A stretch of 64,000 bases of DNA from Macrostomum lignano (taxonomy: Eukaryota). The DNA lies in contig NIVC01002771.1 in assembly GCA_002269645.1 (NCBI GenBank), positions 1 through 64,000 on the forward strand, in the 5' to 3' direction. The notes under the pieces were generated by a model that was given only the letters and a program-made list of their open reading frames with translations, had not been told where the DNA came from and did no database searches. A program made the position numbers and the translations under genes. Shown here piece after piece: positions 522 through 63,758 of this stretch; position 1 is the first letter of the stretch; the number at the start of each line of letters is the position of its first letter.

Positions 522-611
522 AAATCTCGTATCTCTCGCAATTATCGTCTTAGTGCGTATCTTAATGTCTGATATCATAGTTTAGTTTCTTATTGGTACT
601 AGTGTCTGCTT

Positions 612-985
<374 letters not shown>

Positions 986-13201: not shown

Positions 13202-13657
13202 TCAAGCCAAGTATTCTTTGCGCTGCGAACCCGTTTCAACGTTCCACACTGGCGGCTGCGACTGCAGTGCGGGTGCAGTCGTACCGCTCACCGGCCTGTA
13301 GATCGGCTGGTTACCCCGACGGTTAATCAGCGGATTGCCGCTCTGCTCGCGTCGCTGGCGCTCCTCCTTGGCCCTGTGCTGGCGGTGCCGCCGGACCAGA
13401 AAGAAAATCACTACGCACAGTATAATAATAGCGATGACAACCACCAGTGGTATGACAACAACCATCTTGAGGTCAGCTGCGCCTAGAAAGTCCGGCGTAT
13501 CGCAGATGTCATTCTTCCAGCCCTCCAAGCACTGGCAGTAGAGCTTACCTGGCGGTATCTTTCTGCAATAGCCGCCTTCCAGGCAGTAGCTGTGCAGCTG
13601 GATGCGTAGCCTCTCACGCTCTTCCGCCGTGCAGTTGGTAACGCCATAGTCTGACAT
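13202..13657 (-). CDS. Single-EGF-domain transmembrane protein (EGF-ligand-like), 151 aa, no signal peptide
   Basis: C9-x15-C25-x5-C31-x9-C41-x-C43-x8-C52, TM segment MVVVIPLVVVIAIIILCVVIFFLV followed by RRHR. GCC-ATG start context; an in-frame TGA lies between the upstream TTCTAG acceptor and the ATG. Confidence 0.88.
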   Translation of the reverse strand: MSDYGVTNCTAEERERLRIQLHSYCLEGGYCRKIPPGKLYCQCLEGWKNDICDTPDFLGAADLKMVVVIPLVVVIAIIILCVVIFFLVRRHRQHRAKEERQRREQSGNPLINRRGNQPIYRPVSGTTAPALQSQPPVWNVETGSQRKEYLA

Positions 13658-16472: not shown

Positions 16473-17372
16473 GGGGGGGGCATCACAAACCCAAAAACTC
16501 ACAACTCCGAAAAGCGCTTTCCATCATAAACCCCTAAATATCATAAACCCGAAATATCACAAACCCGAAATATCACAAACCCGAAATATCACAAACCCGA
16601 AATATCACAAACCCGAAATATCACAAACCCGAAATATCATAAACCCGAAATATCATAGGTCCGAAAACCAAAATAGCAGCGCCCATCACAAACGGGTTTC
16701 GACGACTTATGATATTTCGGGTTTATGATATTTCGGGTTCGTGATATTTCGGGTTTAAGATGGGCGCTGCTATTTTGGTTTTCGGACTTATGATATTTCG
16801 GGTTTATGATATTTCGGGTTTGTGATTTTTCGGGTTTGTGATATTTCGGGTTTGTGATATTTCGGGTTTGTGATATTTCGGGTTTGTGATATTTCGGGTT
16901 CGTGATATTTCGGGTTTGTGATGGACGCTGCTATTTTGGTTTTCGGACTTATGATATTTCGGGTTTATGATATTTCGGGTTTATGATATTTCGGGTTTGT
17001 GATTTTTCGGGTTTGTGATATTTCGGGTTTGTGATATTTCGGGTTTATGATTTTTCGGGTTTGTGATATTTCGGGTTTGTGATATTTCGGGTTCGTGATA
17101 TTTCGGGTTTGGGATGGACGCTGCTATTTTGGTTTTCGGACTTATGATATTTCGGGTTTATGATATTTCGGGTTTGTGATATTTCGGGTTTGTGAAATTT
17201 CGGGTTTGTGATGGGCGCTGCTATTTTGGTTTTCGGACTTATGATATTTCGGGTTTATGATATTTCGGGTTTGTGATATTTCGGGTTTTTGATATTTCGG
17301 GTTTGTGATATTTCGGTTTTATGATGGAAAGTGCTTTCGGAGTGTGACTTTTCGGGTTTATGACGGCGACCC
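16473..17372. mobile_element. Non-autonomous Mutator-like/foldback DNA transposon with tandem-repeat TIRs and a 9-bp TSD
   Basis: CTGCAACTC is duplicated at 16464-16472 and 17373-17381. Termini are GGG...CCC. The left arm consists of (TCACAAACCCGAAATA) units and the right arm of their reverse complement, sharing a unique GGAAAG(T/C)GCTTT(T)CGGAG block. Confidence 0.88.
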
Positions 17373-18204: not shown

Positions 18205-19090
<886 letters not shown>

Positions 19091-20478
19091 CTCATAATCG
19101 TCAAAGTATGATGAGCCTTGACATCTTCTCAATTATTTTGCCATCGTTACATGTCTTGGCTAAAATACAGAGCTAAAAATATACACGTGAGGAAGTCAAG
19201 AAAATTTTATTTCTAAGATAGCTCGTACTCGTATCTCTTATAATCCTCTACTAGCTATTCAATTGCTGAGTTGAAGCAGTGCACAGTTGCTAAGGATTTT
19301 TCCGGTAAACAGCTCAAATAAATTAAAAACAGTTAAATGTAGAAGCAACCTAAACAAGCTCTTGTAACGACTCTGATTATCAATAAAACAAGCGTTCCCG
19401 AAAATAGCCGGCTTTTCAACAGCAGCTTTTTAATTGCTGCTTTCATAATTGATTGATTAGAGATAAAACCATTTTGAACGATAAAAGCCAACCTAGGAAA
19501 TTTTTTGTTTTAATAGAGTGAAATGAGCAGTTTTCCATTTTTTCAGGGTGAAATCGGCCGAACTGCTGTCCCAATAGTTATCCAACTTCAAAGCTGCTTA
19601 AAGAGAAATTTCCCAGCAAGAGGCAGAGTCGTTCTCTGATAATACCCGAAGGATTATGTCAGTCCAAATCGATAATCGAATTGAATTATTTAAAAATCTT
19701 TTGTTTTGATCAAGCCAGATGTTACGTGGGCGGATCAGCCCACGCAACTGTGCTTGCAGCGTTGCCAATGCACTCTCCGAGAACTGTTCTCACTCTGGCC
19801 TGCAGCAACTGAGTTTCATTTAATGAATTTCATTCATCTGGCCATGAGAGAAGATGGAAACAGAATCTCCATTTAAAGCCAGTCAGTCAGTCAGATGGAC
19901 AATAAAAAGTCGGATCAACGGCGGCAATTTGTATCTGACTGCCGATCTCGGGCGACGGCATTTTGACCATCCCATCCATCTGCGGACGTAGCTATCTGAT
20001 AAAGTGCAACTTCACCCGCAGCTGCAAAGCTTTTTGACAGCTCTTCAATCGTGTGTTACAAGTTCTCACACGCGAATAGGGACAGAACGGTGTTTATAAC
20101 CAAACATGGTAGAGTATAATTCATGCCAGCTCTTATCTTTCAATTTCGTAAAATCTACCCACGTTCCCAACACCACTGAGCGCTCTTCATCCTGTATCCT
20201 CCAACCTCTCCATTTCTATTCTAATAATGAAAGCCCTCCTACGCTGATAGGAGCCCCTAGCAGCCTTTAAAGCAGAAATCAGAGATGCTCCGAGCCAATC
20301 GGAAGCCTCCGGTCTCCATTCTAACCCCTATTTCTCTGCCTTGGCATAGCCTTGATATTTGGCGTCACCAGAGCTGCACCGGGGTTCGCTTGACTTGACG
20401 GCTTCGCGACAAGGCGGAGGAGAAAATCGCACAGACTTCATAAGCTTCGAACCCCATAGCAACTGCAACCGAGCGCCA

Positions 20479-22325
20479 ATGACCTCAAGTGCTCCGGCGA
20501 GTCTGGCAGCCGTAGCCGGTTGCCTGGTGCTGCTCCTGGCGGCAATCGCCTCGGCGGCATCGGCGGAGTCGCCACTGTGGCAGCCAGCGCGATGGGACAA
20601 CTTTCAGTCCATCGACAGTGAACGAGCCGCTGCAGAGCCGGTGGTGGCCGAACTCCGCTCCGGTGAGCTTGCGCCTACCTGTTGACAAAGATTCAGATTA
20701 CTCGTGGGGATGATGATTGTGCAGATTTGTTGAGACTTGAGCGCATCTGTCAATTATAATTTTACGGCGGCAACCGCTATCTAATAAAGGAACTGGTCTC
20801 AAATTCAGACAAAGAGCGGCGCATCTTTGAAAATACCTTATATGGCATGCGCCTTCACTAAAAAGCGCCCCTCCCTCCTTCTCGAGGTTTGAAGTCACAC
20901 ACGCTGCGCAAATGAAAAATCACAATAATTGCTGCAAAGCATACATAATTGCTAATTTTCTTCTCCTATCTGTTGATAGCTCGGCAACTGAGAAAGCTGG
21001 CCATTGATACAGGCTTACACCGGAAATTGGCTCTACTACCTTGCAATTTTGGCCGCTGCAGAGGTTATAAAAAATACGAGTATGATGCACTTAAATGGCC
21101 TAGCACTAACAATACAAGCGTACCTGTGTGACTTAATTATTCATTTCTACGAGCTACGAGCTACGATTTGCATTTTAAGGCAAATAATCAGTAATTGAGT
21201 ACTCGTATCCCACAAATCATTCACGAGTCTGTTGGCAGTCCGTTTGAAAGCATTCTATGTACTACAGTTGAAGGATTATGAGCTCGTAAGCCAATTAGAG
21301 AGATTAAAAATTGAGCTTAAGCGCACCAGCAAAGCATGCCGTATTCATAGCATGCAGAGCACCTTTTATATGCTTGGCATGATGGGCCTTGGTCTCAGCG
21401 CATCTGTACTGAAGCATCAATACTCGACTATTCAACTGCCTCTGCTGCACAGCCTTCAAAAATAGGCATTAATTGGGCTTACAATTGGCAGAGTACGGTG
21501 GCATGGAAATCGCATTCCTTTTATGGTATTCGGCAGGTCTAGTCTGCAATGACGCGTGCTCCGTCATGCTGACGCAGGCGCAGAAATGAAAGCATTTCTT
21601 TAAAAATTCAATTTTAATTTAAGATTAGACGCTAATGTGAATTTCATTCAGGATATCTTAGCGTTTTGTTTGAGACGTTCTTCGCTGAACAGCTACTGAA
21701 TAATTCTACGTATTTTATTGATTGAATGAGACGCGTTCGTCGAATTAAAGCGTGTTTTTCCATTGCTGAGGAGACAAATTTAACATTGTTTCCCTTTCTC
21801 TCGATTGCTAACTCATACAATGGGGCATTTAATAAACTTAATTTGTTTCTCTATTCAGCTTCTTTTTAATTACCAGAGTGGGAATAAAATCGTTGGGCGT
21901 AACAAACCAATGCCGTTAACCAAGTCAACTGATGCTTGAGATAAGTGCTCAATTTTGGAAATCACAGTTTATTTGGTTGGTGGCATAGCTGGTTGAGGTC
22001 ACCTGCTGCTCTCTATTGCCAAAGCCAGTAGCGCTGCTCAAGACTCAATCCCATGCTACCGTGCGAATTCGAACCCGCAGAGCGCCGCTCCGGCCACTGG
22101 CCGTTCCCGATGAGGCTCCGTCGGGTGGCCCAGGCGACCAGGCTGCGCAGACTCGCTGCTGAGCTGCGCGCCGCCATCGACGCCGCCGACACCATTGACG
22201 AAGACGCCGAAGCAGACGTCGAGGAGCCTGCCGCTGGCGGACCGAGGATCGACCAGCCCGGCAGCTACCGCAGGCGGCTCAGCAAGCGCTGCCGGATCGG
22301 CAGGCTGTCCTGCCCCATCGGCTGA
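20479..22325 (+). CDS. Neuropeptide precursor, 142 aa, join(20479..20662,22081..22325), with C-terminal cyclic peptide CRIGRLSCPIG
   Basis: Signal peptide MTSSAPASLAAVAGCLVLLLAAIASAASA. The phase-1 intron GTGAG (20663) to CCCGCAG (22080) restores a continuous frame (429 nt). Multiple RR sites, an acidic spacer and an RRRLSKR site precede a C-x6-C peptide followed by the stop codon. Confidence 0.85.
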
Positions 22326-23344
22326 AGCCTGCGCTGGTCAAAATGTTCGAAATACGCAAAGAGTTGAACTGCAACTGGGAAATAAACAGCCATAGAATAT
22401 TCTCTCGCATATACAGTGCATTCGCGACCAATCCTAAGTTCCAAAATTAATCCATGGTCTACTCAGAAAAATTGTTTGGCCCGCCATTGCCGCCCACCTG
22501 GAGAACTTTGAGACTGAAATAAAACACGAGACTAAGCGATGAACAGTCCCGCTGCTATTCATGCATATCCGCGCTTAACCACCTCGCAGTTTATTCGTTT
22601 CTTTTACACTGGCGTTGCCGCATCGCTGGTGAACTTTTTCGGCTGTTGGTGCCGTCGTTAGAAAAACAAAATCCGCCTACATTTTCCCTGTGGGATAAGA
22701 TCGGCTTTAATCCGATTTTAATCGCCCTTTATTGCTTGGCGGATTAGGAAAAACTGTCAATTCAATTGGAATCGAGTCCCTGTTGAGGCATGCGGCTTTA
22801 AGTATTAATAATATTCGGCGCAAGGCTTGAGAAGTGAAATTCTCGCTGCTAAAATTTGGGCCCGAAGTGGAGCAAAACGTTGGCCAAACAAATCGCTGAG
22901 ACAACACAGGTGACCCCCAGTCTAACCGCATGTGCAGGCAGAGTATAGCCTAAGCTATCTTATCAATGAGCCCCTCCCTTTTCGATTGTACTTTATGCCA
23001 GCTCGCAAACTTGCGGCTCATTGTGGCTGCTTTTGGTTGTTCAAAAAAGCAAGCGGTGTTTCATCGCAGAATTTTCCAGTACATGATAAAATATTTTCTC
23101 TCAGCGACCTTGAATCTCTGTTTCATGGTTGGTCTGAGTCAGCTTTAGGCACACGTTTATCTTTTATTGCCAAAGCAAGGAAAAATTCGACTGCTAACTC
23201 TGACTCTGTTGTCATGGCAACGGATAACGATTTTTGAATCTGTTTATCTGGCGGTATTTACAGTATTTAAATCAAAGCATTAGAAATTAGTGGCCTGATC
23301 AAACCCCCTGCTGACAGCCTACCATTTAAGTTCTCGCTGCAACC

Positions 23345-24295
23345 ATGGCCTTGAGCTTTGCTCAGTTCGGACTTGTCCTGCTCTTTGTGGCCTCAGGCAG
23401 TGCTCAACTGGTTGAATTCTGCCCATTGCTGGGAGGCGTTAACTCGATCAATTGGAATGTCAACCAGGATGAAACCCTCGAAATTAACACTCTGCTGAGA
23501 GGAGTAAACAATTATGGGCCCAGCATGGACTGCACCTTTTCTATCGAGGCCAACGCCCCAGGTAGAATCATCGTCCGGGTGATTGAGAGCAACCTGCAGT
23601 ATTATGCGGCCTCCATAAGCATCCGCACGTACGCTCTTGGCGGCTATCTAGCAAGTTGGAGCCAGCTTACCTACGACAAGGATAGGGATGACAACTTCAT
23701 AGGCCTGACCAACAAGCTTTACATCAACTTTAATAGCCGCAGTTCGCCGCCTGGGAATGCCGCTGGCGTGCGCCTTTTGCTGACCTTCATGCGCGCAAAC
23801 GGCTGCCCACCGCGCTGGACCCCAATGACGCTGGACGGCCGATCGCAGTGCGTCGGCGTTCCCACGCAAAATGTCTACAAGTTCGGAGCAGCTCAGCGCT
23901 ACTGCAACCTTCAGCGCTCCAATTTGCTAATATCTGAGCGCGACAACATCGCCACAGTTCTTCAACGGGCCAACGCTGCCAATGTCTGGATCGGTATGAC
24001 GGCGGAACCTAGCGGCTCTTACTCAACGTACCGTTGGATTAACAACATCCGCGTGGCAGCCAATCATAACGTCAGCTGCACCGGCGGTTGCCGACCGGGC
24101 AGCACCACGCACCGGTGCGTGTACGCCAGGGACCCGCGCTCGCTGATCCAGATCGAGTGCGGCCAGTCGATCCGGCCCGCCTGCTTCATGCCGGTGGGCG
24201 GCACCGACACTTTCTATGCCGGCTCGGCCGCCGTCAGAGCCAGCGACGCCCTGCTGGCTGGCGCGGTGCTTCTTCTCTGGGGTCTTCTGAACTAG
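23345..24295 (+). CDS. CUB + C-type-lectin-like domain protein with signal peptide and probable GPI anchor, 316 aa, intronless
   Basis: N-terminal hydrophobic signal; CUB-like NYGPSMDCTFSI...IVRV...LYINF; CTLD-like CPPRW...C...AQRYC...VWIG...YRW...C...C...C; small-residue omega region (AGSAA) and hydrophobic C-terminus ALLAGAVLLLWGLLN; AATAAA at about 24343. Confidence 0.85.
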   Translation: MALSFAQFGLVLLFVASGSAQLVEFCPLLGGVNSINWNVNQDETLEINTLLRGVNNYGPSMDCTFSIEANAPGRIIVRVIESNLQYYAASISIRTYALGGYLASWSQLTYDKDRDDNFIGLTNKLYINFNSRSSPPGNAAGVRLLLTFMRANGCPPRWTPMTLDGRSQCVGVPTQNVYKFGAAQRYCNLQRSNLLISERDNIATVLQRANAANVWIGMTAEPSGSYSTYRWINNIRVAANHNVSCTGGCRPGSTTHRCVYARDPRSLIQIECGQSIRPACFMPVGGTDTFYAGSAAVRASDALLAGAVLLLWGLLN

Positions 24296-26007: not shown

Positions 26008-27643
26008 GGTCATGCAGACACTTCGGTGCCAGACATTTCGGTGCATGCAGACACTTCGGTACCAGACATTTCAGTTCCAGACACTTCGGTGCCAGACATT
26101 TCGGTGCATGAAGACAGTTCGGTGCCAGACAGTTCGGTGCCAAACACTTCGGTGCCAGACAGTTCGGTGCCAGACACTTCGGTGCCAGACACTTCGGTGC
26201 CAGACACTTCGGTGCATGCAGACACTTCGGTGCCAAGATAGTTCGGTGCCAGACAGTTCGGTGCCAGACACTTCGGTGCCAGACATTTCAGTTCCAGACA
26301 CTTCGGTGCCAGACATTTCAGTTCCAGACACTTCGGTGCCAGACATTTCGGTGCATGCAGACAGTTCGGTGCCAGACAGTTCGGTGCCAAACACTTCGGT
26401 GCTAGACAGTTCGGTGCCAGACAGTTCGGTGCCAGACAGTTCGGTGCCAGACAGTTCGGTGCCAGACACTTCGGTGCCAGACACTTCGGTGCATGCAGAC
26501 ACTTCGGTGCCAAGATAGTTCGGTGCCAGACAGTTCGGTGCCAGACACTTCGGTGCCAGACATTTCAGTTCCAGACACTTCGGTGCCAGACATTTCAGTT
26601 CCAGACACTTCGGTGCCAGACATTTCGGTGCATGCAGACAGTTCGGTGCCAGACAGTTCGGTGCCAAACACTTCGGTGCTAGACAGTTCGGTGCCAGACA
26701 GTTCGGTGCCAGACAGTTCGGTGCCAGACAGTTCGGTGCCAGACACTTCGGTGCCAGACACTTCGGTGCATGCAGACACTTCGGTGCCAGACATTTCAGT
26801 GCCAGACACTTCGGTGCCAGACAGTTCAGTGCCAGACACTTCGGTGCCAGACATTTCAGTGCCAGACACTTCGGTGCCAGACATTTCAGTGCCAGACACT
26901 TCGGTGCCAGACATTTCAGTGCCAGACACTTCGGTGCTAGACAGTTCGGTGCCAGACACTTCGGTGCCAGACATTTCAGTGCCAGACACTTCGGTGCCAG
27001 ACATTTCGGTGCCAGACATTTCGGTGCCAGACACTTCGGTGCATGCAGACACTTCGGTGCCAGACACTTCGGTGCCAGACACTTCGGTGCATGCAGACAC
27101 TTCGGTGCCAGACATTTCAGTGCCAGACACTTCGGTGCCAGACATTTCAGTGCCAGACACTTCGGTGCCAGACAGTTCAGTGCCAGACACTTCGGTGCCA
27201 GACAGTTCAGTGCCAGACACTTCGGTGCCAGTCAGTTCAGTGCCAGACACTTCGGTGCCAGACATTTCAGTGCCAGACACTTCGGTGCCAGACATTTCAG
27301 TGCCAGACACTTCGGTGCCAGACATTTCGGTGCCAGACACTTCGGTGCATGCAGACACTTCGGTGCCAGACACTTCGGTGCCAGACACTTCGGTGCATCC
27401 AGACACTTCGGTGCCAGACATTTCAGTGCCAGACACTTCGGTGCCAGACATTTCAGTGCCAGACACTTCGGTGCCAGACAGTTCAGTGCCAGACACTTCG
27501 GTGCCAGACAGTTCAGTGCCAGACACTTCGGTGCCAGACAGTTCAGTGCCAGACACTTCGGTGCCAGACATTTCAGTGCCAGACACTTCGGTGCCAGACA
27601 TTTCAGTGCCAGACACTTCGGTGCCAGACATTTCAGTGCCAGA
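26008..27643. repeat. Minisatellite, 15-bp unit (CAGACACTTCGGTGC) with variants and a higher-order duplication of about 277 bp
   Basis: Visible array; it produces all the VPDTS/CQTLR/GTEVS ORFs. Confidence 0.97.
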
Positions 27644-27648
27644 GCAAT

Positions 27649-28660
27649 TGTGGAAGCTTTGCGAGAAGGTGGAGTTTCAGAGAATTTTTTCTTTTGCATG
27701 AATTTAAGTAGTATCTCAGTACCAGCCAAGAGACAGTACCAGTTTTAAAGCCCGCTGTGTGGCAAGCTAAAATATAGAAGAACCTTAAGAGGTCTGGAGC
27801 GTAAGAAGTACGCAATTATTTTGCAGCAAGACATAACAATGGCGTCGCTGTCTCGAGAGAACCTGCGGGAGCTTCCCTGGACAGAAGACAAATTCGAGGC
27901 CTGGATCGAGCGGTTTGAAGCCGTCTGCAGGAGATCCGGCGTGAAGGATGAGAAGGAGGAAGGGTTTTCGCCGAAGACAGACTTCTTCATAAGCCTCATG
28001 GGGAAACTGCCTACGACAAGCTGCGGAACCTGGTCGCTCCGGCGAAGCCAGAGAACAAGACCTTCAAATAATTGAAGAATGAAATTGAGAAGCATGTCGT
28101 GTCACAGAAGAAACTGGTTGTAGCTGAGCGCTACAAGTTGAACTTACTGCATGAAACAAGATGAATACGAATCAGCGGCAGATTTTGAAAACAGGTTACG
28201 TGCTCAAGCTGACCGATGTCAATTCGGAGATTTTTTACAGGAAGCTTTGAGAGACAGATTCGTGGCACGACTGCGCAGTGAGTCGGTGGTGAAAGAGCTG
28301 CTTATCAACCTGGAGCTGACGGTGGAGACTGCCACGGCGCAAGAGCAAGTAAGCAAGAGTGCCTTAAGCGCAATGGAAAGGTGGAAACAGTCAGTGCGAC
28401 TAAGGGCAGAGTACGACAACAAAAAAGGGCCCAAGCTCAGGGACGCACTCAGCAAAGCTTGCAATTTCTGTATGAAGAGGCACCCGCCAAAGACATGCCC
28501 CGCGTTTGGACCAAAATGTCGAAAGTGTGGGAAAATGAACCATTTTGAAGCTGCATGCAAGCTTAACAAGCCAGCTAGCTCACATGGAAGGATGGCATCC
28601 GGCTCCATCAAAGGAAAGCCGTCGATGCGAGTGTGCAGGAATCGAGGAGGATCAGGATAA
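27649..28660 (+). mobile_element. Truncated Ty3/Gypsy LTR retrotransposon: probable 5' LTR, PBS and frameshifted gag
   Basis: A TG...ATAACA segment (27649-27838) is followed by a TGGCGTCG PBS-like sequence overlapping the gag ATG (27839). The gag reads WIERFEAVC...AERYKL...ESAADFENRLRAQADRCQFG...LRDRFV and carries a double zinc knuckle, CNFCMKRHPPKTCPAFGPKCRKCGKMNHFEAAC. No pol is present. Confidence 0.9.
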
Positions 28661-36514: not shown

Positions 36515-37128
36515 GGGGTCACTGCCCTCCCTAGATTCTTCAATAGGGGTCACTGCCCTCTGCCCTCCCTAGATTCTTCAATAGGTCACTGCCATCTCCC
36601 TAGATTCTTCAATAGGGGTCACTGCCATCTCCCTAGATTATTCAATAGGGGTCACTGCCATCTCCCTAGATTATTCAATAGGGGTCACTGCCATCTCCCT
36701 AGATTATTCAATAGGGGTCACTGCCATCTCCCTAGATTATTCAATAGGGGTCACTGCCATCTCCCTAGATTATTCAATAGGGGTCACTGCCATCTCCCTA
36801 GATTCTTCAATAGGGGTCACTGCCATCTCCCTAGATTATTCAATAGGGGTCACTGCCATCTCCCTAGATTATTCAATAGGGGTCACTGCCATCTCCCTAG
36901 ATTATTCAATAGGGGTCACTGCCATCTCCCTAGATTATTCAATAGGGGTCACTGCCCTCTCCCCAGATTCTTCAATAGGGGTCACTGCCATCTCCCTAGA
37001 TTATTCAATAGGGGTCACTGCCATCTCCCTAGATTATTCAATGGGGGGTCACTGCCATCTCCCTAGATTCTTCAATAGGGGTCACTGCCCTCTCCCCAGA
37101 TTCTTCAATAGGGGTCACTGCCCTCTCC
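36515..37128. repeat. 33-bp minisatellite (GGGGTCACTGCCATCTCCCTAGATTATTCAATA)
   Basis: Visible tandem array of about 18 units. Confidence 0.96.
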
Positions 37129-37295
37129 CGGGTTACAATCCTCTTCCCGAGTGTTTTAACGTAGATCGCTTCTCCCCTAAAGTTGAATAAGGTTAGCCTA
37201 TTAATTCATCTACCGTTCATGCTCGTCAGCCTTCCACAGCTGTGCCTAAAAGTTTAATTGAAAGAATCAACCAAGCAGTCAGTCAGCTATCAACC

Positions 37296-37556
37296 ATGCA
37301 GTCGCTATTCGCCGTCGCCTTCCTAGCCGTTATCTTCGTCGCCGTGCTGCCATCGGGCGTTGATTGCATCACTCTCAATGACGCCCGGGCTGACCCAGAC
37401 AGGTACATCCTGTACGACACCACCCAGTTCCACATTGGCATGCACTGCGGCATCTCGCTGGTGATTTGCTACGCCATTCTCTGCGCTATCTGGCTGACCA
37501 TTATGGGCGTTATCTACGCCACCGGCGGCAAGAAGATGCGCCGTCAGGCTAGCTAA
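37296..37556 (+). CDS. Small type-I membrane protein, 86 aa, unknown family
   Basis: ACC-ATG start, signal peptide MQSLFAVAFLAVIFVAVLPSGVDC, short ectodomain, TM segment GISLVICYAILCAIWLTIMGVIYAT and basic tail KKMRR. GC-rich codon usage like RPS25; CCTTCCACAG acceptor at 37239. Confidence 0.75.
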   Translation: MQSLFAVAFLAVIFVAVLPSGVDCITLNDARADPDRYILYDTTQFHIGMHCGISLVICYAILCAIWLTIMGVIYATGGKKMRRQAS

Positions 37557-37687
37557 GCTGCTAGCTCATTAACATAATTAATGCTGAGTTTGACAGCAGT
37601 CATTTGCATATAAACTGTATTCATATACAATTTTACTAGGCGTTTGGATATTCTGAAATTCTCTTTACCTATTCTAGTCTAGGACTC

Positions 37688-38430
37688 AGTAGATTCTGGG
37701 ACTCTATTAGTAGATTCTGGGACTCACTAGTAGATTCTGGGACTCTATTAGTAGATTATGGGACTCTATTAGTAGATTCTGGGACTCACTAGTAGATTCT
37801 GGGACTCTATTAGTAGATTATGGGACTCACTAGTAGATTCTGGGACTCTATTAGTAGATTCTGGGACTCACTAGTAGATTCTGGGACTCTATTAGTAGAT
37901 TATGGGACTCACTAGTAGATTCTGGGACTCTATTAGTAGATTCTGGGACTCACTAGTAGATTCTGGGACTCTATTAGTAGATTATGGGACTCTATTAGTA
38001 GATTCTGGGTCTCTATTAGTAGATTCTGGGACTCTATTAGTAGATTATGGGACTCTATTAGTAGATTCTGGGACTCTATTAGCAGATTCTGGGACTCTAT
38101 TAGTAGATTCTGGGACTCTATTAGCAGATTCTGGGTCTCTATTAGTAGATTCTGGGACTCTATTAGTAGATTCTGGGACTCTATTAGTAGATTCTGGGAC
38201 TCTATTAGTAGATTATGGGACTCTATTAGTAGATTCTGGGTCTCTATTAGTAGATTCTGGGACTCTATTAGTAGATTCTGGGACTCTATTAGTAGATTCT
38301 GGGACTCTATTAGCAGATTCTGGGACTCTATTAGTAGATTCTGGGACTCTATTAGCAGATTCTGGGTCTCTATTAGTAGATTCTGGGACTCTATTAGTAG
38401 ATTCTGGGACTCTATTAGCAGATTCTGGGA
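37688..38430. repeat. 20-21-bp minisatellite (AGTAGATTCTGGGACTCTATT)
   Basis: Visible tandem array. Confidence 0.96.
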
Positions 38431-39290
38431 CTATTAATAGGTTATAGGACTTATTAGTAAATAAGAAACAGAACTGTTTAAGTATGCTCAAATAATTCTG
38501 TCCCATAACGATAATTTTTAAGTGACAGGTTTTACTTCTGGGTTTTATTTCTAGAGCAGTCCCATTTTTAGTAGTTTTTCCCGTTAATATTTGTTTTGCC
38601 GGCCCCTTTTTCTACTGCAGTAGAATTTTTTTCAATAATTATATTGTGTCGGGGAGATGCTGGCACCTGTGGCGCGCAATAGTTTTAAGCATCGTTTTCT
38701 TTAAGTCGCTTTTAGACATCTGTGTAAAAATAGCAATACACTGCTTTTAATTTGCCTTCAGTTCTTATTCCCTATTAGGTCAAGCAATCGCACCAATTAT
38801 TCAATTTCTAAGTCACGCTGAGTTCATTTTGAGTGCAATTTCTATACTAATCTGAGTTATACAAAATACAATTTTCTATTGCTTTCGTCACCTGTTGGCA
38901 TATTGATTGTGCAATAAATCTTATTTGATTATAATTAGTTTGCACCCACCTTTCCTCATTTAATTTAATCATAGAAGTTTTTTGTTTACTGTTTTAGGTA
39001 ATTTATTAGTAAAGCCTACCTTCTGCCTCTGCTATTATCGTTGCTCGCGTAAGCGGCATTCCCTCTTTTTTATTAATCTCTAATAATTGACATCCTATTG
39101 TTTAGGCTGCGCTCTACTGTAGTAGTCAATTATCTTCATATAATTAATTATACCATAGTTTTCTCTCTGCTTAGCTAGTTTGTACTCCCAACCAGTTTTG
39201 GGTGAAAGTTTTAATCCCGTTTTAATCCGACTTTCATGTTCTTCATTTACAGGCTAACAAATTGTTTTCAAAGTAATTATTTCAAAATAA

Positions 39291-39530: not shown

Positions 39531-39989
39531 AATTATAATTGTTCTTCACTATCTCAAGTGGCTTCAGTCTTGACAGAAGCGCATATTCTAATGACTTTGA
39601 GCAGGATTCTGCTCCAGTGTCACACCCAGTGGGTTAGGCAGTGACGTACACTGCGAGTTATCGTGCAGCATGCAGCATCTACATTTAAAGAGTAGTATAG
39701 GAGCATGATTGGTGACACAGAGCGGGATCTACTTTCTCATATCTTCCCTGTCAACCCGGCTGAGCTATAAGCTTATTGAAACGCGTGCAACGCGCGGCTT
39801 AGCCTGGGAAGTTGTGCTCACTTTCTCGAGTTACAATAAGACAGAACTGGGCGGGGCGCTCCAGCCAGTGATGATGACTGGTTCGACTGACGAAGGGGTG
39901 CAGAAAGTGAGCCTAAAAAGCCACACCTTTTTCATACTTTGCCAACTTGACTGTTTGATCACTAAGATCGTTTTAAAGCTACGAGTATT

Positions 39990-41015
39990 CCACTCAGTCA
40001 GTCTCATTCTATTCCTCATCATCTACTCAGTCAGACTCATTCTATTCCTCATCTTCTACTCAGTCAGTCTCATTCTATTCCTCATCATCTACTCAGTCAG
40101 ACTCATTCTATTCCTCATCTTCTACTCAGCCAGTCTCATTCTATTCCTCATCATCTACTCAGTCAGACTCATTCTATTCCTCATCTTCTACTCAGCCAGT
40201 CTCATCTAGTCTATTCCTCATCTTCTACTCAGCCAGTCTCATCTAGTCTATTCCTCATCTTCTACTCAGCCAGTCTCATCTAGTCTATTCCTCATCTTCT
40301 ACTCAGCCAGTCTCATCTAGTATATTCCTCATCTTCTACTCAGCCAGTCTCATTCTATTCCTCATCTTCTACTCAGCCAGTCTCATCTAGTCTATTCCTC
40401 ATCTTCTACTCAGCCAGTCTCATTCTATTCCTCATCTTCTACTCAGCCAGTCTCATCTAGTCTATTCCTCATCTTCTACTCAGCCAGTCTCATCTAGTCT
40501 ATTCCTCATCTTCTACTCAGCCAGTCTCATTCTATTCCTCATCTTCTACTCAGCCAGTCTCATCTAGTCTATTCCTCATCTTCTACTCAGCCAGTCTCAT
40601 TCTATTCCTCATCTTCTACTCAGCCAGTCTCATTCTATTCCTCATCTTCTACTCAGCCAGTCTCATTCTATTCCTCATCTTCTACTCAGCCAGTCTCATT
40701 CTATTCCTCATCTTCTACTCAGCCAGTCTCATTCTATTCCTCATCATCTACTCAGCCAGTCTCATTCTATTCCTCATCATCTACTCAGCCAGTCTCATTC
40801 TATTCCTCATCTTCTACTCAGCCAGTCTCATTCTATTCCTCATCTTCTACTCAGCCAGTCTCATTCTATTCCTCATCTTCTACTCAGCCAGTCTCATTCT
40901 ATTCCTCATCTTCTACTCAGCCAGTCTCATTCTATTCCTCATCTTCTACTCAGCCAGTCTCATCTAGTCTATTCCTCATCATCTACTCAGCCAGTCTCAT
41001 TCTATTCCTCATCAT
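39990..41015. repeat. 33-bp minisatellite (ACTCAGCCAGTCTCATTCTATTCCTCATCTTCT)
   Basis: Visible tandem array with a CTAGT variant unit. Confidence 0.96.
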
Positions 41016-41749
41016 CATATTCAGTTTAACATTAAAACCGATATACTGAAGTCACAATAGGAGCAAATAGGGAAATCGCCACCTCCCTGACATGATGATG
41101 GCCAAGGGGCCCGGCCCCCGGCATCTATATGCGAAACCCTAGTACGCTAAGTATACTTGCCGCCCAGTGAGGTACGGCGCTACATCTATCCAGACATGCA
41201 TCGAGCCGTGACCGCCTCAAATCAAGCCATTCATTCATTCCACCTTGCCTAGCATCAGTCAGGCTTGAAATATTTTGTGTTGCTCGATTGTTTTGCCCTC
41301 AGGTTTGTTTGAGGCGCATCCTATCCAGCATGTTACGCACCAACTGTGCTCAAAGCCCAGCTCTGTTCCCTTATTTGGATTGGGCTTGACGCTTCACGGA
41401 GCACAGGCGTAATAGCGCTTCTGGGCTGATGCCGCTATGGGCGGGGATGCTGTCAGCTGTTGTGTGCAGATCTTGAACTGCTTCCCATTCGCTTCCCCCT
41501 GCTGTTTATTGATTGTAACCACCTGCTTTGCTGGCGATTCTTATCTGACTGTGCAGATTTGAAAACCGCTCGCTTTGTTTATGATCCATTGATTGCCTTG
41601 GTCATTAGCGGCGGGATGACCTGCGTTTATCGACTCAGTTATCGTTATTAGTTATTAACGTTATTAGATATTTGTTACTAGTTACCGACTTATCTTTGGC
41701 GTTGAAACACACCCAACCTTCGCGCTAAAACGCACTCTTTTTGGCGCTT

Positions 41750-42878
41750 AATCTCATCTTGGCGCTTAATCTCATCTTGGCGCTTAATCTCATCTTGGCG
41801 CTTAATCTCATCTTGTCGCATAATCTCATCTTGGCGCTTAATCCCAGCTTGGCGCTTAAACACACCCATATTGGCGCTTAAACACATATCTTGGCGCTTA
41901 ATAAAGACACTCATCTAGGCGTTTAAACACACTCATCAAGGCGTTTAAACACACTCATCAAGGCGTTTAAACACACTCATCAAGGCGTTTAAACACACTC
42001 ATCAAGGCGTTTAAACACACTCATCTAGGCGTTTAAACACTCATCTAGGCGTTTAAACACTCATCTAGGCGTTTAAACACTCATCTAGGCGTTTAAACAC
42101 TCATCTAGGCGTTTAAACACTCATCTAGGCGTTTAAACACTCATCTAGGCGTTTAAACACACTCATCTTTGGCGTTTAAACACACTCATCTTTGGCGTTT
42201 AAACACTCATCTAGGCGTTTAAACACTCATCTAGGCGTTTAAACACACTCATCAAGGCGTTTAAACACACTCATCTAGGCGTTTAAACACTCATCTAGGC
42301 GTTTAAACACTCATCTAGGCGTTTAAACACTCATCTAGGCGTTTAAACACTCATCTAGGCGTTTAAACACTCATCTAGGCGTTTAAACACTCATCTAGGC
42401 GTTTAAACACACTCATCTTTGGCGTTTAAACACACTCATCTTTGGCGTTTAAACACTCATCTAGGCGTTTAAACACTCATCTAGGCGTTTAAACACACTC
42501 ATCAAGGCGTTTAAACACTCATCTAGGCGTTTAAACACACTCATCAAGGCGTTTAAACACACTCATCAAGGCGTTTAAACACACTCATCAAGGCGTTTAA
42601 ACACTCATCTAGGCGTTTAAACACACTCATCTTTGGCGTTTAAACACACTCATCTTAGGCGCTTAAACACACTCATCTTAGGCGTTTAAACACACTCATC
42701 TAGGCGTTTAAACACTCATCTAGGCGTTTAAACACACTTATCTTTGGCGCTTAAACACACTCATCTAGGCGTTTAAACACTCTCATCTAGGAGTTTAAAC
42801 ACACTCATCTAGGAGTTTAAACACACTCATCTAGGCGTTTAAACACACTCATCTAGGCGTTTAAACACACTCATCTTT
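41750..42878. repeat. Compound minisatellite: 18-bp (TTGGCGCTTAATCTCATC) grading into 20-23-bp (GGCGTTTAAACACACTCATCTA)
   Basis: Visible array with a gradual change in the unit. Confidence 0.95.
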
Positions 42879-43267: not shown

Positions 43268-43712
<445 letters not shown>

Positions 43713-44104
43713 CAGTCAGTCGATTCAACTATAGAAATGGCCAGTCTTGGTATGAATTGGTATGAAAGAGGAAGTACAAAATAGCTTCCAACCCCCTCAA
43801 GCCCTCTCTTATCTTTAAGAATGCAGAGGGCAGCTGCGAGTTCAATTCCAATTGAGCAACAGCTCAATCGACACGCAATGCCAGCCAGTGCAGATCTTTG
43901 CTTTTTCCGGTCGCTCAGTTTGAGTGGCTTAAAGGGTATGAGATTTGAGTAGGTAAGCACTAAATCAGTATGATTTTCTATGTCATGCAGCTGTGCCAGT
44001 AATGACTTGTGAACTGAGTTTCAGTTTGAGTCCTATCGGAGTTAAAGGATTTAAGGGCAGGGGGCCGCCCTCCCCCTTTAATAGGCGCCTCTATTCCTGG
44101 TTTC

Positions 44105-44617
44105 TTGGTGCTGGCGCCCCTTGGTGCTGGCGCCCCTTGGTGCTGGCGCCCCTTGGTGCTGGCGCCCCTTGGTGCTGGCGCCCCTTGGTGCTGGCGCCCC
44201 TTGGTGCTGGCGCCCCTTGGTGCTGGCGCCCCTTGGTGCTGGCGCCCCTTGGTGCTGGCGCCCCTTGGTGCTGGCGCCCCTTGGTGCTGGCGCCCCTTGG
44301 TGCTGGCGCCCCTTGGTGCTGGCGCCCCTTGGTGCTGGCGCCCCTTGGTGCTGGCGCCCCTTGGTGCTGGCGCCCCTTGGTGCTGGCGCCCCTTGGTGCT
44401 GGCGCCCCTTGGTGCTGGCGCCCCTTGGTGCTGGCGCCCCTTGGTGCTGGCGCCCCTTGGTGCTGGCGCCCCTTGGTGCTGGCGCCCCTTGGTGCTGGCG
44501 CCCCTTGGTGCTGGCGCCCCTTGGTGCTGGCGCCCCTTGGTGCTGGCGCCCCTTGGTGCTGGCGCCCCTTGGTGCTGGCGCCCCTTGGTGCTGGCGCCCC
44601 TTGGTGCTGGCGCCCCT
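44105..44617. repeat. Perfect 16-bp minisatellite (CCCCTTGGTGCTGGCG)
   Basis: About 32 identical units. Confidence 0.98.
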
Positions 44618-46129: not shown

Positions 46130-46559
46130 GAATCTACCCTGTCAGAACATCGCGCTAAGCTTCAGCCTTGACACTCCTTTGCCCGATTTGAACCTCAAAT
46201 CAGCCGAAATTGTATTTGAGCGCGTCTATTCGCGGCCCACCGGCTCAAATTGGACGGAGGACTGTTAAGGGCGGAAGGCGCGTTGAACGTCATTAAACCC
46301 GATCCCCATCCCTAGGAGCTCAGTCTTTGATACCCGCGCGTTTTGCCGTTGAGTTCGGATCCTGAGTCGCTTATGATTTTTAAAGGTGTTTCCTACTCAA
46401 ATATTCTTAACTACTCGTACAAATGAATATCACCTTATATGCATTGATAAAAATTACTTTTTTGATCTTGTGAAATAGATCCTTAAAATCTGGTGAACCT
46501 GATTTGAGGATTTTGTACAACTGGTGTACGGAGCCGTTACCCCTGATGCTCCTGTATTG

Positions 46560-46990
46560 TAAATCTGATGCTTAGATCTTGTACATCTGATACTTGCATC
46601 TTGTACATCTGATGCTTTGATCTTGTACATCTGATGCTTTGATCTTGTACATCTGATGCTTTGATCTTGTACATCTGATGCTTTGATCTTGTACATCTGA
46701 TGCTTTGATCTTGTACATCTGATGCTTTGATCTTGTACATCTGATACTTGCATCTTGTACATCTGATGCTTAGATCTTGTACATCTGATGCTTTGATCTT
46801 GTACATCTGATGCTTTGATCTTGTAAACCTGATGCTAAGATCTTGTACATCTGATGCTTAGATCTTGTACATCTGATGCTTTGATCTTGTACACCTGATG
46901 CTTAGATCTTGTACACCTGATGCTTAGATCTTGTACATCTGATGCTTAGATCTTGTACACCCGAAGCTAGGATCCTGTACAACCGATGCT
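46560..46990. repeat. 22-bp minisatellite (ATCTGATGCTTTGATCTTGTAC)
   Basis: Visible tandem array. Confidence 0.95.
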
Positions 46991-47129
46991 TGGATCTAAA
47001 GGACTAAAAACAGGGCTACAAGGATTTCTGTGGCTATCAGAACTTCGATACTTGAGTTTGACTATAGAAGTACATATTTATTAGTGCTGCCTTCGGTTGT
47101 ACATAGCTGCTTAGCTGAGATATGCTGGA

Positions 47130-47340
47130 TAATTAAAGACAAACCAATCTGAGTAAGAGCTCTGGCGTGAGCTATGTGCATACACAGTATAATTCTGGTA
47201 CCCATTTTACAGCTGGGTGAACTGAAGCAATGCAGAGTTAAGTGTCTTGCTCGAGAACACAAATTGTTCTGCGAGGTCAAGAATCGAACCCCTGACCTTC
47301 CATTCGTGAGTCCGACGCTCTAACCACTAGGCTAAAACCC
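47130..47340 (-). mobile_element. tRNA-derived CORE-type SINE
   Basis: Minus strand: A box TAGCCTAGTGG, B box GGTTCGATTCT, then CORE-like GAGCAAGACACTTAAC...TCAGTTCACCCAGCTGTAAAATGGGTACC (compare the MIR core CTCAGTTTCCTCATCTGTAAAATGGG). Confidence 0.85.
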
Positions 47341-47341
47341 C

Positions 47342-48245
47342 TACCAGTACAAGCACGCAAACCTATGTACATACACAGTACCAGTACAAGAACTCAAACT
47401 TATGTACATACACAGTACCAGTACAAGAACTCAAAGTTATGTACATACACAGTACCAGTACAAGAACTCAAACTTATGTACATACACAGTACCAGTACAA
47501 GAACTCAAACTTATGTACATACACAGTACCAGTACAAGAACTCAAACGTATGTACATACACAGTACCAGTACAAGAACTCAAACTTATGTACATACACAG
47601 TACCAGTACAAGAACACAAAGCTATGTACATACACAGTACCATTACAAAAACACAAAGTTATGTACATACACAGTACCAGTACAAGAACACAAAGCTATG
47701 TACATACACAGTACCAGTACAAGCACGCAAACCTATGTACATACGCAGTACCAATACAAGAACACAAAGTTATGTACATACACAGTACCATTACAAAAAC
47801 ACAAAGTTATGTACATACACAGTACCAGTACAAGAACGCAAAGTTATGTACATACACAGTACCAGTACAAGAACTCAAACTTATGTACATACACAGTACC
47901 AGTACAAGAACTCAAACGTATGTACATACACAGTACCAGTACAAGAACTCAAACTTATGTACATACACAGTACCAGTACAAGAACACAAAGCTATGTACA
48001 TACACAGTACCATTACAAAAACACAAAGTTATGTACATACACAGTACCAGTACAAGAACACAAAGCTATGTACATACACAGTACCAGTACAAGCACGCAA
48101 ACCTATGTACATACGCAGTACCAATACAAGAACACAAAGTTATGTACATACACAGTACCATTACAAAAACACAAAGTTATGTACATACACAGTACCAGTA
48201 CAAGAACGCAAAGTTATGTACATACACAGTACCAGTACAAGCACG
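47342..48245. repeat. 37-bp minisatellite (CAGTACCAGTACAAGAACTCAAACTTATGTACATACA)
   Basis: Visible array abutting the SINE head. Confidence 0.96.
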
Positions 48246-48874
48246 CGATCAAATAAAAAACAATTATAAATGCTCCAATCATTTTTGCGTCCAAATTTGT
48301 CCGTCCACTCAGCGCGCAATTATCCTTTTGAGTCACATTTGAGTCACAGGTTGATATTTGCCATTGCACACTGAAATCCTGCTAGCCCAAGGCAGTTTAC
48401 ATTTTGCAAAGGAGTTGATAAAAGAATTTACTTCAATGCTGTTTTTGCGTGAGATTTCTTATCCAATTTGAGCACAGCAACAAGGCTGATGCCGCCGCCG
48501 CCCCCCGCCCAAGTTTATGACTTCTGACGCCGCTCCGCCGCCCAAGGAGTCATAAAAACTTGCGCGGTCACGTGTGACCCCCGCCGCACTCTGAACCTTT
48601 TCAAGACTCGATTTGAGAACAAAGAGATTCGAGAGTTTGCTGGCAGCTCGAAATTGAGCACCTGGCGGACAAATTTTACAACTTAGCGAGTTCGTCTCGG
48701 CCGCCCCCGCTTTTATTTAGGCATCTCTGTGCATTGCTACTTGAAGTAGGCTCGCATTTATTTTTTCTAACGAATTTATTAAAAGAAAGAGAAAACAAAA
48801 CCGCATTAATATTTGACATGTTGATTTGACAATAAAAATGAAATAGAATATCGGCATCTTAAAGTCATTATTGG

Positions 48875-55025: not shown

Positions 55026-63758
<8,733 letters not shown>

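What the first reader, a model, noticed from the sequence alone, without database searches (positions are those of the whole stretch)
20479..22325. Neurophysin-less precursor of an oxytocin/vasopressin-like peptide with an enlarged ring (KR-CRIGRLSCPIG-stop)
Seen: splicing two unremarkable ORFs yields a 142-aa secreted precursor whose last residues (22290-22322) are CRIGRLSCPIG, directly after an RRRLSKR cleavage site. Known: OT/VP-family peptides are C-x4-C-P-x-G (isotocin is CYISNCPIG) and normally sit right after the signal peptide, followed by neurophysin. Here the tail CPIG is kept, the ring is C-x6-C, the peptide is C-terminal and no neurophysin is present. Inference: this is either a member or relative of the flatworm 'platytocin' system (a VP/OT-type peptide I recall being reported from marine flatworms, whose sequence I cannot check) or a separate cyclic family, since C-x6-C also fits allatostatin-C/somatostatin spacing. 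With no basic residues after the Gly, the product could be CPI-amide or free CPIG.
Basis: partly seen in the sequence, partly recalled or inferred. Interest (0 to 1): 0.82.

Follow-up and report, generated by a model that had tools for sequence, protein, structure and literature searches.

The report
Orphan flatworm cyclic-peptide precursor gene
This is a real, already annotated but uncharacterised gene of the flatworm Macrostomum lignano that encodes a small secreted hormone-precursor-like protein ending in a possible 11-residue disulfide-looped peptide. It is not an oxytocin/vasopressin gene, and nothing yet shows that the peptide is made or conserved.

Summary
Exons 20479-20662 and 22081-22325, joined across a GT..AG phase-1 intron, encode the 142-aa protein described. 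That protein is the public gene model PAA55320.1 (BOX15_Mlig011401g2, Macrostomum lignano), whose annotation was built from RNA-seq transcripts.

The oxytocin/vasopressin reading fails the family's defining features:
- The ring is C-x6-C, not C-x4-C.
- The peptide is C-terminal, not directly after the signal peptide.
- There is no neurophysin: Pfam finds nothing, the proprotein has only two Cys, and the 64-kb window holds no remnant.

M. lignano also has four separate canonical VP/OT-type precursor genes (Kobayashi 2022). The only resemblance left is the three-residue tail P-I-G.

The architecture (one disulfide loop of six residues, at the precursor's C-terminus after KR) is that of allatostatin-C-type peptides. 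However, the loop sequence and the intron phase do not match that family.

No homologue was found outside M. lignano, and the two gene copies are about 99.6% identical in exons and intron alike, so constraint cannot be judged. The motif alone is within chance (1 seen, 0.4 expected).

Best reading: a lineage-restricted prohormone-like gene for a cyclic, possibly amidated signalling peptide of unresolved family. It is a moderate-interest candidate, not a discovery.

The parts
20479..20662 (+). Exon 1: start codon, signal peptide (aa 1-29, 20479-20565; predicted cleavage ASA|ES) and the N-terminal propeptide up to the first base of codon 62
   Evidence: The hydrophobic core AGCLVLLLAAI has a Kyte-Doolittle score of 2.85, against a maximum of 0.87 elsewhere in the protein. 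The A-x-A cleavage site is my inference. UniProt names the protein 'Secreted protein'.
20663..22080 (+). Single intron, 1418 nt, GT..AG, phase 1, 42% GC, stops in all frames
   Evidence: It corresponds to the gap in the called gene on the public contig.
22081..22325 (+). Exon 2: the rest of the propeptide, the processing sites, the C-terminal peptide and the stop codon
22083..22124 (+). RR-SGHWPFPMRL-RR: a second possible cleavage product (aa 65-74, 22089-22118) between two dibasic sites, with no Gly for amidation
   Evidence: Its -MRL end recalls the flatworm -MRLamide peptides listed in Collins 2010. This is a resemblance only.
22152..22268 (+). Acidic spacer LAAELRAAIDAADTIDEDAEADVEEPAAGGPRIDQPGSY (aa 86-124, net charge -9)
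   Evidence: AlphaFold2 gives helices without a compact fold (pTM 0.27).
22269..22289 (+). Basic processing region RRR-LS-KR (aa 125-131) directly before the peptide
   Evidence: That a prohormone convertase cleaves here is inferred, not shown.
22290..22322 (+). Candidate mature peptide CRIGRLSCPIG (aa 132-142). Cys132 and Cys139 are the only Cys residues of the proprotein, so one C-x6-C disulfide loop is possible. The terminal Gly is a possible amide donor.
   Evidence: Predicted monoisotopic masses: 1171.595 (oxidised free acid) and 1113.59 (oxidised CRIGRLSCPI-NH2).
22381..22386 (+). AATAAA polyadenylation signal 56 nt after the stop codon

Best explanation
Mlig011401 is a transcribed two-exon gene of Macrostomum lignano, present in at least two near-identical genomic copies. 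It encodes a 142-aa secreted, prohormone-type protein with no detectable relatives.

Proposed mechanism:
- The signal peptide is removed after Ala29.
- In the regulated secretory pathway a prohormone convertase cuts at the RRR...KR cluster (aa 125-131) and releases the C-terminal 11-mer CRIGRLSCPIG.
- Its two Cys residues, the only ones in the proprotein, form a disulfide that closes a six-residue loop.
- The exposed terminal Gly may be converted by peptidylglycine alpha-amidating monooxygenase to give CRIGRLSCPI-amide.
- The small cationic cyclic peptide then acts as an intercellular signal (neuropeptide or hormone), most plausibly through a GPCR.

In architecture it belongs with the 'single cyclic peptide at the precursor's C-terminus' class (allatostatin-C, somatostatin, MCH), not with VP/OT. 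Its family membership is unresolved.

Shown: gene structure, transcript-based annotation, signal-peptide-like N-terminus, basic sites, two Cys residues, terminal Gly.
Inferred: cleavage, disulfide, amidation, signalling role, receptor class.
For: The gene model is identical to the public transcript-derived annotation. Coding signature and exon/intron compositional contrast are present. The N-terminus has a strong hydrophobic core with an A-x-A site, and UniProt names the protein 'Secreted protein'. Five basic runs divide the proprotein. An acidic 39-aa spacer (-9) sits before a cationic terminal peptide (+2). There are exactly two Cys residues, both in the terminal peptide. There is no Pfam domain and AlphaFold2 predicts no compact fold (pTM 0.27), as expected for a processed precursor rather than a folded protein. 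A loop of six residues, a C-terminal position and a single cyclic peptide per precursor match the stated hallmarks of ASTC-type precursors.
Against: There is no evidence of conservation. No homologue was found outside M. lignano in a word-indexed search of 5.8 billion proteins or an exhaustive phmmer search of 1.84 billion representatives. The gene copies are too similar (about 99.6% in exons and intron alike; 2 non-synonymous and 1 synonymous exon differences) to show purifying selection. The terminal motif alone is within chance, and dibasic sites are not significantly enriched. No expression-site or peptidomic data could be found. GC-rich sequence yields long ORFs easily. The AlphaFold2 model is single-sequence and low-confidence.
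Confidence: 0.45

Rival explanations
1. The secreted product is not a signal between the worm's own cells. The same precursor yields a cationic disulfide-looped peptide used outside the cell, for example an antimicrobial or defensive, gland, adhesive or seminal-fluid component. Many such Macrostomum genes are lineage-specific and evolve fast.
For: An anionic propiece followed by a small cationic Cys-looped C-terminal peptide is also the layout of many host-defence and venom peptide precursors (general knowledge). No homologues exist, which fits the rapid evolution reported for reproduction-related Macrostomum genes (title and abstract of PMC7336406).
Against: A net charge of only +2 over 11 residues is weak for an antimicrobial peptide. 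The gene ID is absent from the retrievable parts of the reproduction and positional tables, but those files were truncated, so this counts for little.
Confidence: 0.22
2. A young orphan ORF on a real transcript: the RNA exists, but the 142-aa reading frame, or at least its terminal 'peptide', has no selected function, and the prohormone look comes from GC-rich, Ala/Arg-rich sequence.
For: No homologue exists anywhere. The motif frequency is within chance. Dibasic enrichment is not significant. Other frames and the opposite strand of the same GC-rich exons also carry 50-90-aa ORFs.
Against: The signal-peptide-like N-terminus, the in-frame GC3>GC1>GC2 pattern, the in-frame splice and the placement of the only two Cys residues immediately after the last basic site together make a coherent precursor. 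Both gene copies keep the frame intact.
Confidence: 0.2
3. It is the platyhelminth orthologue of allatostatin-C and acts on an ASTC/somatostatin-type GPCR. This is a specific sub-case of the best explanation.
For: Protostome ASTC loops always have six residues. The peptide is single-copy and lies at the precursor's C-terminus. There is one intron in the proregion, as in spiralian ASTC genes. Loop positions 6-7 (L-S) resemble I-S and V-A of insect and Aplysia ASTC. IGR[L/F] is shared with the starfish ASTC-type peptide ArSS1, KCIGRFQPFSMPC. Allatostatin ligands had not been reported from flatworms as of 2018.
Against: The loop lacks the common Asn and the FxP motif. The first loop residue is Arg instead of an aliphatic or aromatic residue. 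There is no N-terminal extension before Cys1. The tail is PIG instead of a single aromatic residue. The intron is phase 1, not the shared phase 0. No sequence search links the protein to any ASTC precursor.
Confidence: 0.12
4. One reading: a neurophysin-less derivative or relative of the VP/OT (platytocin) system with an enlarged ring.
For: The tail Cys-Pro-Ile-Gly is identical to the end of isotocin (general knowledge). The terminal Gly could give an amide as in VP/OT peptides.
Against: The ring is C-x6-C, not C-x4-C. The peptide is at residues 132-142 rather than directly after the signal peptide. There is no neurophysin by Pfam at E<=10, and only 2 Cys in the proprotein. There is no neurophysin-like coding remnant in the 64-kb window. 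Divergent VP/OT paralogues in nemerteans keep neurophysin even after losing their Cys residues. M. lignano has four separate canonical VP/OT precursor genes and no clear VP/OT receptor.
Confidence: 0.03

Closest known systems
Allatostatin-C-type precursors of protostomes (e.g. Aplysia AstC SHYSSMCMFNVVACY, receptor-validated, PMC8786951; family features in PMC9048919)
   Same: It is a short secreted precursor with one cyclic peptide. The peptide lies at the C-terminal end after a dibasic site. The two Cys residues are separated by exactly six residues. A single intron lies in the proregion. Loop positions 6-7 are aliphatic and small.
   Different: There is no Asn or FxP in the loop. The first and fifth loop residues are Arg. 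There is no N-terminal extension. The tail is P-I-G instead of one aromatic residue. The intron is phase 1 rather than phase 0. There is no detectable precursor similarity.
VP/OT-type precursors, including flatworm platytocin (PMC8896804) and the four M. lignano genes PAA85176.1, PAA50340.1, PAA46766.1 and PAA87831.1
   Same: Both have a disulfide-looped peptide ending Cys-Pro-x-Gly with a potential C-terminal amide, and both occur in this species.
   Different: The ring has six rather than four internal residues. The peptide is at the C-terminus, not directly behind the signal peptide. There is no GKR site and no neurophysin. It is a different gene from the published M. lignano VP/OT precursors.
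Deuterostome C-terminal cyclic peptides of the somatostatin/MCH group: starfish ArSS1 KCIGRFQPFSMPC (PMC8851493) and vertebrate MCH (ring CMLGRVYRPC, quoted from memory)
   Same: The cyclic peptide lies at the C-terminus of the precursor. A short [I/L]-G-R-[L/F/V] stretch lies just inside the first Cys.
   Different: Their loops have 8-10 residues, against six here. The shared stretch is only four residues and was noticed after the fact, so it is well within chance. No precursor similarity was found.

Membership tests
Vasopressin/oxytocin (platytocin) family | Cys1-Cys6 ring, i.e. C-x4-C | tested here: not met
   The peptide is C-RIGRLS-C, with six residues between the Cys residues.
Vasopressin/oxytocin (platytocin) family | A single peptide directly following the signal peptide (definition in Thiel 2021) | tested here: not met
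   The signal peptide ends near residue 29 and the peptide occupies residues 132-142, the extreme C-terminus.
Vasopressin/oxytocin (platytocin) family | A neurophysin domain with conserved Cys residues after the peptide | tested here: not met
   Pfam finds 0 families at E<=10. The proprotein has only 2 Cys. The stop codon follows the peptide directly.
Vasopressin/oxytocin (platytocin) family | C-terminal tail Pro-x-Gly giving a C-terminal amide | tested here: met
   The tail is C-P-I-G followed by the stop codon. This is only three residues. Amidation is not shown, and the usual GKR site is replaced by the end of the protein.
Vasopressin/oxytocin (platytocin) family | Sequence homology of the precursor to VP/OT precursors | tested here: not met
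   No hit other than itself in either protein search. Its accession PAA55320.1 and that of its copy PAA62312.1 are not among the four M. lignano VP/OT precursors of Kobayashi 2022.
Vasopressin/oxytocin (platytocin) family | Activates a VP/OT-type GPCR | not testable with these tools
   Kobayashi 2022 found no clear VP/OT receptor orthologue in M. lignano.
Allatostatin-C type | Two Cys residues separated by six residues | tested here: met
   Cys132 and Cys139.
Allatostatin-C type | A single cyclic peptide derived from the C-terminal region of the precursor after a basic cleavage site | tested here: met
   KR at 130-131, peptide at 132-142, then the stop codon. No other Cys pair exists in the proprotein.
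Allatostatin-C type | Loop sequence tendencies: Asn in the loop, FxP motif, first loop residue aliphatic or aromatic (Koch 2022) | tested here: not met
   The loop RIGRLS has no Asn and no FxP, and its first residue is Arg. Koch 2022 notes that no motif is strictly conserved, so this weakens membership rather than excluding it.
Allatostatin-C type | [quoted passage not shown] | tested here: not met
   The gene has one intron in the proregion, but exon 1 is 184 nt, which makes it phase 1.
Allatostatin-C type | Precursor similarity or clustering with ASTC precursors | tested here: not met
   No hits. A CLANS-type clustering against a curated ASTC set could not be run because the sequences are not held as text.
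Allatostatin-C type | Activates an ASTC/somatostatin-type GPCR | not testable with these tools
   This needs synthetic peptide and receptor assays.
Generic neuropeptide/peptide-hormone precursor | N-terminal signal peptide | tested here: met
   The hydrophobic core at residues 13-23 has a Kyte-Doolittle score of 2.85 and there is an A-S-A|E site. UniProt names the protein 'Secreted protein'. No dedicated signal-peptide predictor was available.
Generic neuropeptide/peptide-hormone precursor | Candidate peptides flanked by di- or tribasic convertase sites | tested here: inconclusive
   There are five basic runs (63, 75, 84, 125, 130), but the 6 dibasic pairs against 3.4 expected from composition give P=0.085.
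Generic neuropeptide/peptide-hormone precursor | Conservation of the bioactive peptide in related species | tested here: inconclusive
   No relatives were found, but the coverage of other Macrostomum species in these collections is unknown. The motif-profile search failed its own positive control. The published orthogroup table was truncated.
Generic neuropeptide/peptide-hormone precursor | Neuronal or endocrine expression and detection of the mature peptide | not testable with these tools
   No expression or peptidomic record of Mlig011401 was found.

The most novel reading that the evidence does not exclude
CRIGRLSCPI(G/amide) is a genuine bioactive cyclic neuropeptide. It would be either the long-missing, highly divergent allatostatin-C/somatostatin-class ligand of flatworms or the founder of a cyclic neuropeptide family restricted to macrostomid flatworms. 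It lies in a species where transgenesis and RNAi make its function directly testable.
Probability: 0.2. Interest if true: 0.55.

Novelty: new member of a known kind. Interest (0 to 1): 0.3.

Why it matters
Flatworm neuropeptide catalogues are incomplete, and several ancestral bilaterian peptide systems appear to be missing from the phylum. Allatostatin ligands had not been reported from flatworms as of 2018. M. lignano is a genetically tractable flatworm that retains some systems lost in planarians and parasites, such as VP/OT-type precursors. A validated cyclic peptide from this gene would add a ligand for receptor deorphanisation and bear on how the ASTC/somatostatin/MCH group evolved in Spiralia. 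As it stands, the value is more modest. An annotated 'hypothetical protein' can now be labelled a candidate prohormone with a precise, mass-spectrometry-testable product, and a tempting but wrong OT/VP label is avoided.

Tried and rejected
1. OT/VP or platytocin membership was rejected on ring size, peptide position and absence of neurophysin.
2. Homologue searches found only the M. lignano copies: a word-indexed search of 5.8 billion proteins and an exhaustive phmmer search of 1.84 billion representatives. The one extra hit, P0004, is a 5183-aa V/S/G/D-rich repeat protein with 28 matched stretches and is compositional.
3. A degenerate-motif profile of the last 45 residues (36 conservative variants, alignment A4) returned nothing at E<=10, not even the source protein. 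The positive control failed, so this is uninformative and is not counted as absence.
4. Two metagenome scans, one with the exon-2 protein and one with a degenerate back-translation of the peptide, found nothing.
5. A constraint test between the two genomic copies was not possible. They differ at 3 of 429 coding positions (A7V, V17L, and a synonymous change in Gly135). The 1418-nt intron has 4 substitutions and one 12-bp indel.
6. Literature: the peptide string and the gene ID occur in no held paper. Supplements that use Mlig IDs lack the gene, but the relevant tables were truncated when stored. The platytocin sequence is only in figures and is not held. The ASTC supplementary sequences are not held. 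McVeigh 2009 is not held.
7. No Rfam family or tandem repeat lies in or beside the gene.
8. The third large protein search was left unused. A neurophysin query would be swamped by vertebrate hits, and the published accessions already settle the point.

Full report
**What is there.** The window is bases 1-64000 of contig NIVC01002771.1 of the Macrostomum lignano assembly GCA_002269645.1. Locus L001 covers record positions 13345-34295, and its coordinates map one-to-one onto the window. Joining 20479-20662 (184 nt) to 22081-22325 (245 nt) across a GT..AG intron gives a 429-nt reading frame. The product is MTSSAPASLAAVAGCLVLLLAAIASAASAESPLWQPARWDNFQSIDSERAAAEPVVAELRSERRSGHWPFPMRLRRVAQATRLRRLAAELRAAIDAADTIDEDAEADVEEPAAGGPRIDQPGSYRRRLSKRCRIGRLSCPIG. 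A 142-residue gene is called at exactly these coordinates on the public contig. The protein is PAA55320.1, 'hypothetical protein BOX15_Mlig011401g2', which UniProt calls 'Secreted protein'. The GenBank annotation of this assembly was made from a genome-guided RNA-seq transcriptome (StringTie/TACO/TBONE, with ORFs from TransDecoder; Wudarski 2017).

**Is it more than chance?** The gene is; the motif is not. Exons are 70% GC and the intron 42%. In the proposed frame GC3>GC1>GC2 (0.78/0.70/0.61), the same ordering as the two neighbouring genes. The unspliced message would terminate after 68 aa, and AATAAA lies 56 nt past the stop codon. The N-terminus has a single strong hydrophobic core followed by A-S-A|E. 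By contrast, 'dibasic-C-x6-C-up to four residues-stop' is expected 0.4 times per window in composition-preserving shuffles and is seen once. The six dibasic pairs are not significantly more than the 3.4 expected for this Arg-rich protein (P=0.085).

**Anatomy of the product.** After the signal peptide, basic runs at residues 63, 75, 84, 125 and 130 would divide the proprotein into:
- a 33-aa acidic N-terminal piece;
- SGHWPFPMRL;
- VAQATRL;
- a 39-aa strongly acidic spacer (net charge -9);
- the dipeptide LS;
- the terminal CRIGRLSCPIG (net charge +2).

Cys132 and Cys139 are the only Cys residues in the proprotein, so a single intramolecular disulfide is the natural outcome. The protein ends in Gly, which could be used directly as an amide donor; this is an inference from the known chemistry of the amidating enzyme. 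Pfam finds nothing even at E<=10. A single-sequence AlphaFold2 model shows helices without a compact fold (pTM 0.27). That fits a precursor that is cut up rather than a folded protein, but the model has low confidence.

**Relatives.** None were found outside the species. The word-indexed search of 5.8 billion proteins returned only the query's own cluster. The exhaustive phmmer search of 1.84 billion representatives added only a 5183-aa V/S/G/D-rich repeat protein that matches the Ala-rich signal-peptide region in 28 stretches, which is a compositional artefact.

The cluster holds three M. lignano sequences that differ only at A7V and V17L in the signal peptide. The second genomic copy (L002, contig NIVC01001952.1) has the same downstream neighbour. 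It is about 99.6% identical to the window across exons, intron and flanks. There are three differences in 429 coding bases: two non-synonymous and one synonymous, the last in the loop Gly codon. The intron has four substitutions and a 12-bp indel. These are recent duplicates or haplotypes of this partly duplicated genome and say nothing about selection.

A degenerate-motif profile search failed to recover even its own source protein, so it is uninformative. Two metagenome scans were empty.

**The OT/VP reading.** Thiel 2021 states the family's precursor plan: a signal peptide directly followed by one peptide, then a large neurophysin domain with conserved Cys residues. Even the strongly divergent nemertean paralogues that lost both Cys residues keep neurophysin. 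Here the peptide is at the opposite end of the precursor, the ring has six rather than four internal residues, and there is no neurophysin. Its hits are Cys-containing minisatellite translations and a nuclear-receptor zinc finger.

Kobayashi 2022 reports four canonical VP/vasotocin precursor genes in M. lignano (PAA85176.1, PAA50340.1, PAA46766.1, PAA87831.1). None of these is this gene. The same paper reports that no clear VP/OT receptor orthologue was found in M. lignano. What remains is the tripeptide P-I-G after the second Cys. I put this reading at about 3%.

**The allatostatin-C reading.** ASTC is defined by two Cys residues six residues apart and a single cyclic peptide per precursor. 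The peptide derives from the C-terminal region of the precursor. [quoted passage not shown] All three features are met here.

The finer features are not met. Most ASTCs have an Asn in the loop and many have FxP. The first loop residue is aliphatic or aromatic. [quoted passage not shown] This loop is R-I-G-R-L-S and the single proregion intron is phase 1. Compared with the receptor-validated Aplysia AstC SHYSSMCMFNVVACY, only loop positions 6-7 (aliphatic, small) agree. There is no N-terminal extension, and the tail is PIG rather than one aromatic residue.

The stretch I-G-R-L resembles I-G-R-F in the starfish ASTC-type peptide ArSS1, KCIGRFQPFSMPC, and L-G-R-V in vertebrate MCH (from memory). 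Four residues noticed after the fact carry little weight. So the gene works like an ASTC-class precursor in layout, but membership is unproven, at about 12%.

**Best explanation and rivals.**
- Best explanation (about 45%, which includes the ASTC sub-case): a lineage-restricted prohormone-type gene whose C-terminal 11-mer is released at RRR...KR, cyclised by one disulfide, possibly amidated, and used as an intercellular signal.
- Rival (about 22%): the same precursor makes a non-signalling secreted peptide, for defence, a gland secretion or reproduction.
- Rival (about 20%): the ORF is a young orphan with no selected function on a real transcript.
- Rival (about 3%): the OT/VP reading.

No expression or peptidomic information on Mlig011401 could be retrieved. 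The ID and the peptide string occur in no held paper. The supplementary tables that would list the gene were truncated when stored.

**Verdict.** This is a reasonable candidate for a flatworm cyclic neuropeptide with precisely predictable masses (1113.59 Da amidated, 1171.60 Da free acid, both oxidised). It has no evidence of conservation, expression site or processing. Interest is moderate to low (0.3). If the peptide proves real and turns out to be the flatworm ASTC-class ligand or a new cyclic family, it would deserve about 0.55.

Noticed in passing
window 22083-22124: Inside the same precursor, SGHWPFPMRL is bracketed by RR on both sides. Its -MRL end recalls the flatworm myomodulin-like -MRLamide peptides (AVRLMRLa, GLRLMRLa) tabulated by Collins 2010, but there is no Gly for amidation.
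   Followed up: partly
window 23345-24295 (+); also L002 12854-13804: This single-exon 316-aa ORF lies 1 kb downstream. It has an N-terminal signal-like sequence, a weak CUB-like match, a C-type lectin domain (Pfam E=4.9e-5) and a hydrophobic C-terminal tail. The same gene pair is kept at the second genomic copy.
   Followed up: partly
window 55871-56080 and 60369-61100 (+): These are exons of a nuclear hormone receptor gene. One is a C4 zinc-finger DNA-binding segment ([31 protein letters not shown]...), found by accident in the tblastn control. The other is a ligand-binding-domain fragment (Pfam Hormone_recep, E=1.6e-4) after a Gln/Ala-rich stretch. (CTAT)n and (TCTA)n microsatellites lie at 56142-56501 and 61046-61909.
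   Followed up: partly
window 28151-28660 (+): A 169-aa ORF carries a CCHC zinc knuckle (Pfam zf-CCHC, E=0.006). It is probably a gag fragment of a retroelement.
   Followed up: partly
window 13202-13657 (-): A called 151-aa gene encodes a Cys-containing extracellular segment, one transmembrane helix and a basic cytoplasmic tail. It has only weak Pfam matches, to transmembrane regions (TMEM154, EphA2_TM).
   Followed up: partly
window 603-984, 16710-17325, 18205-19090, 26015-27643, 36565-38459, 39988-42876, 43268-44617, 46557-49870, 50468-51031, 53301-54462, 58980-59275, 62704-63344: The window has an exceptional density of micro- and minisatellites, for example (GATA)221 at 18205-19090 and a 15-bp unit repeated 106 times at 26015-27643. 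These generate most of the long 'ORFs' in the window, which is consistent with the reported 15% simple and tandem repeat content of this genome.
   Followed up: partly
window 20200-22600 vs L002 9722-12110: The two genomic copies of the locus are about 99.6% identical, non-coding DNA included. They are assembly-level duplicates or haplotypes of the partly duplicated DV1 genome rather than old paralogues.
   Followed up: yes
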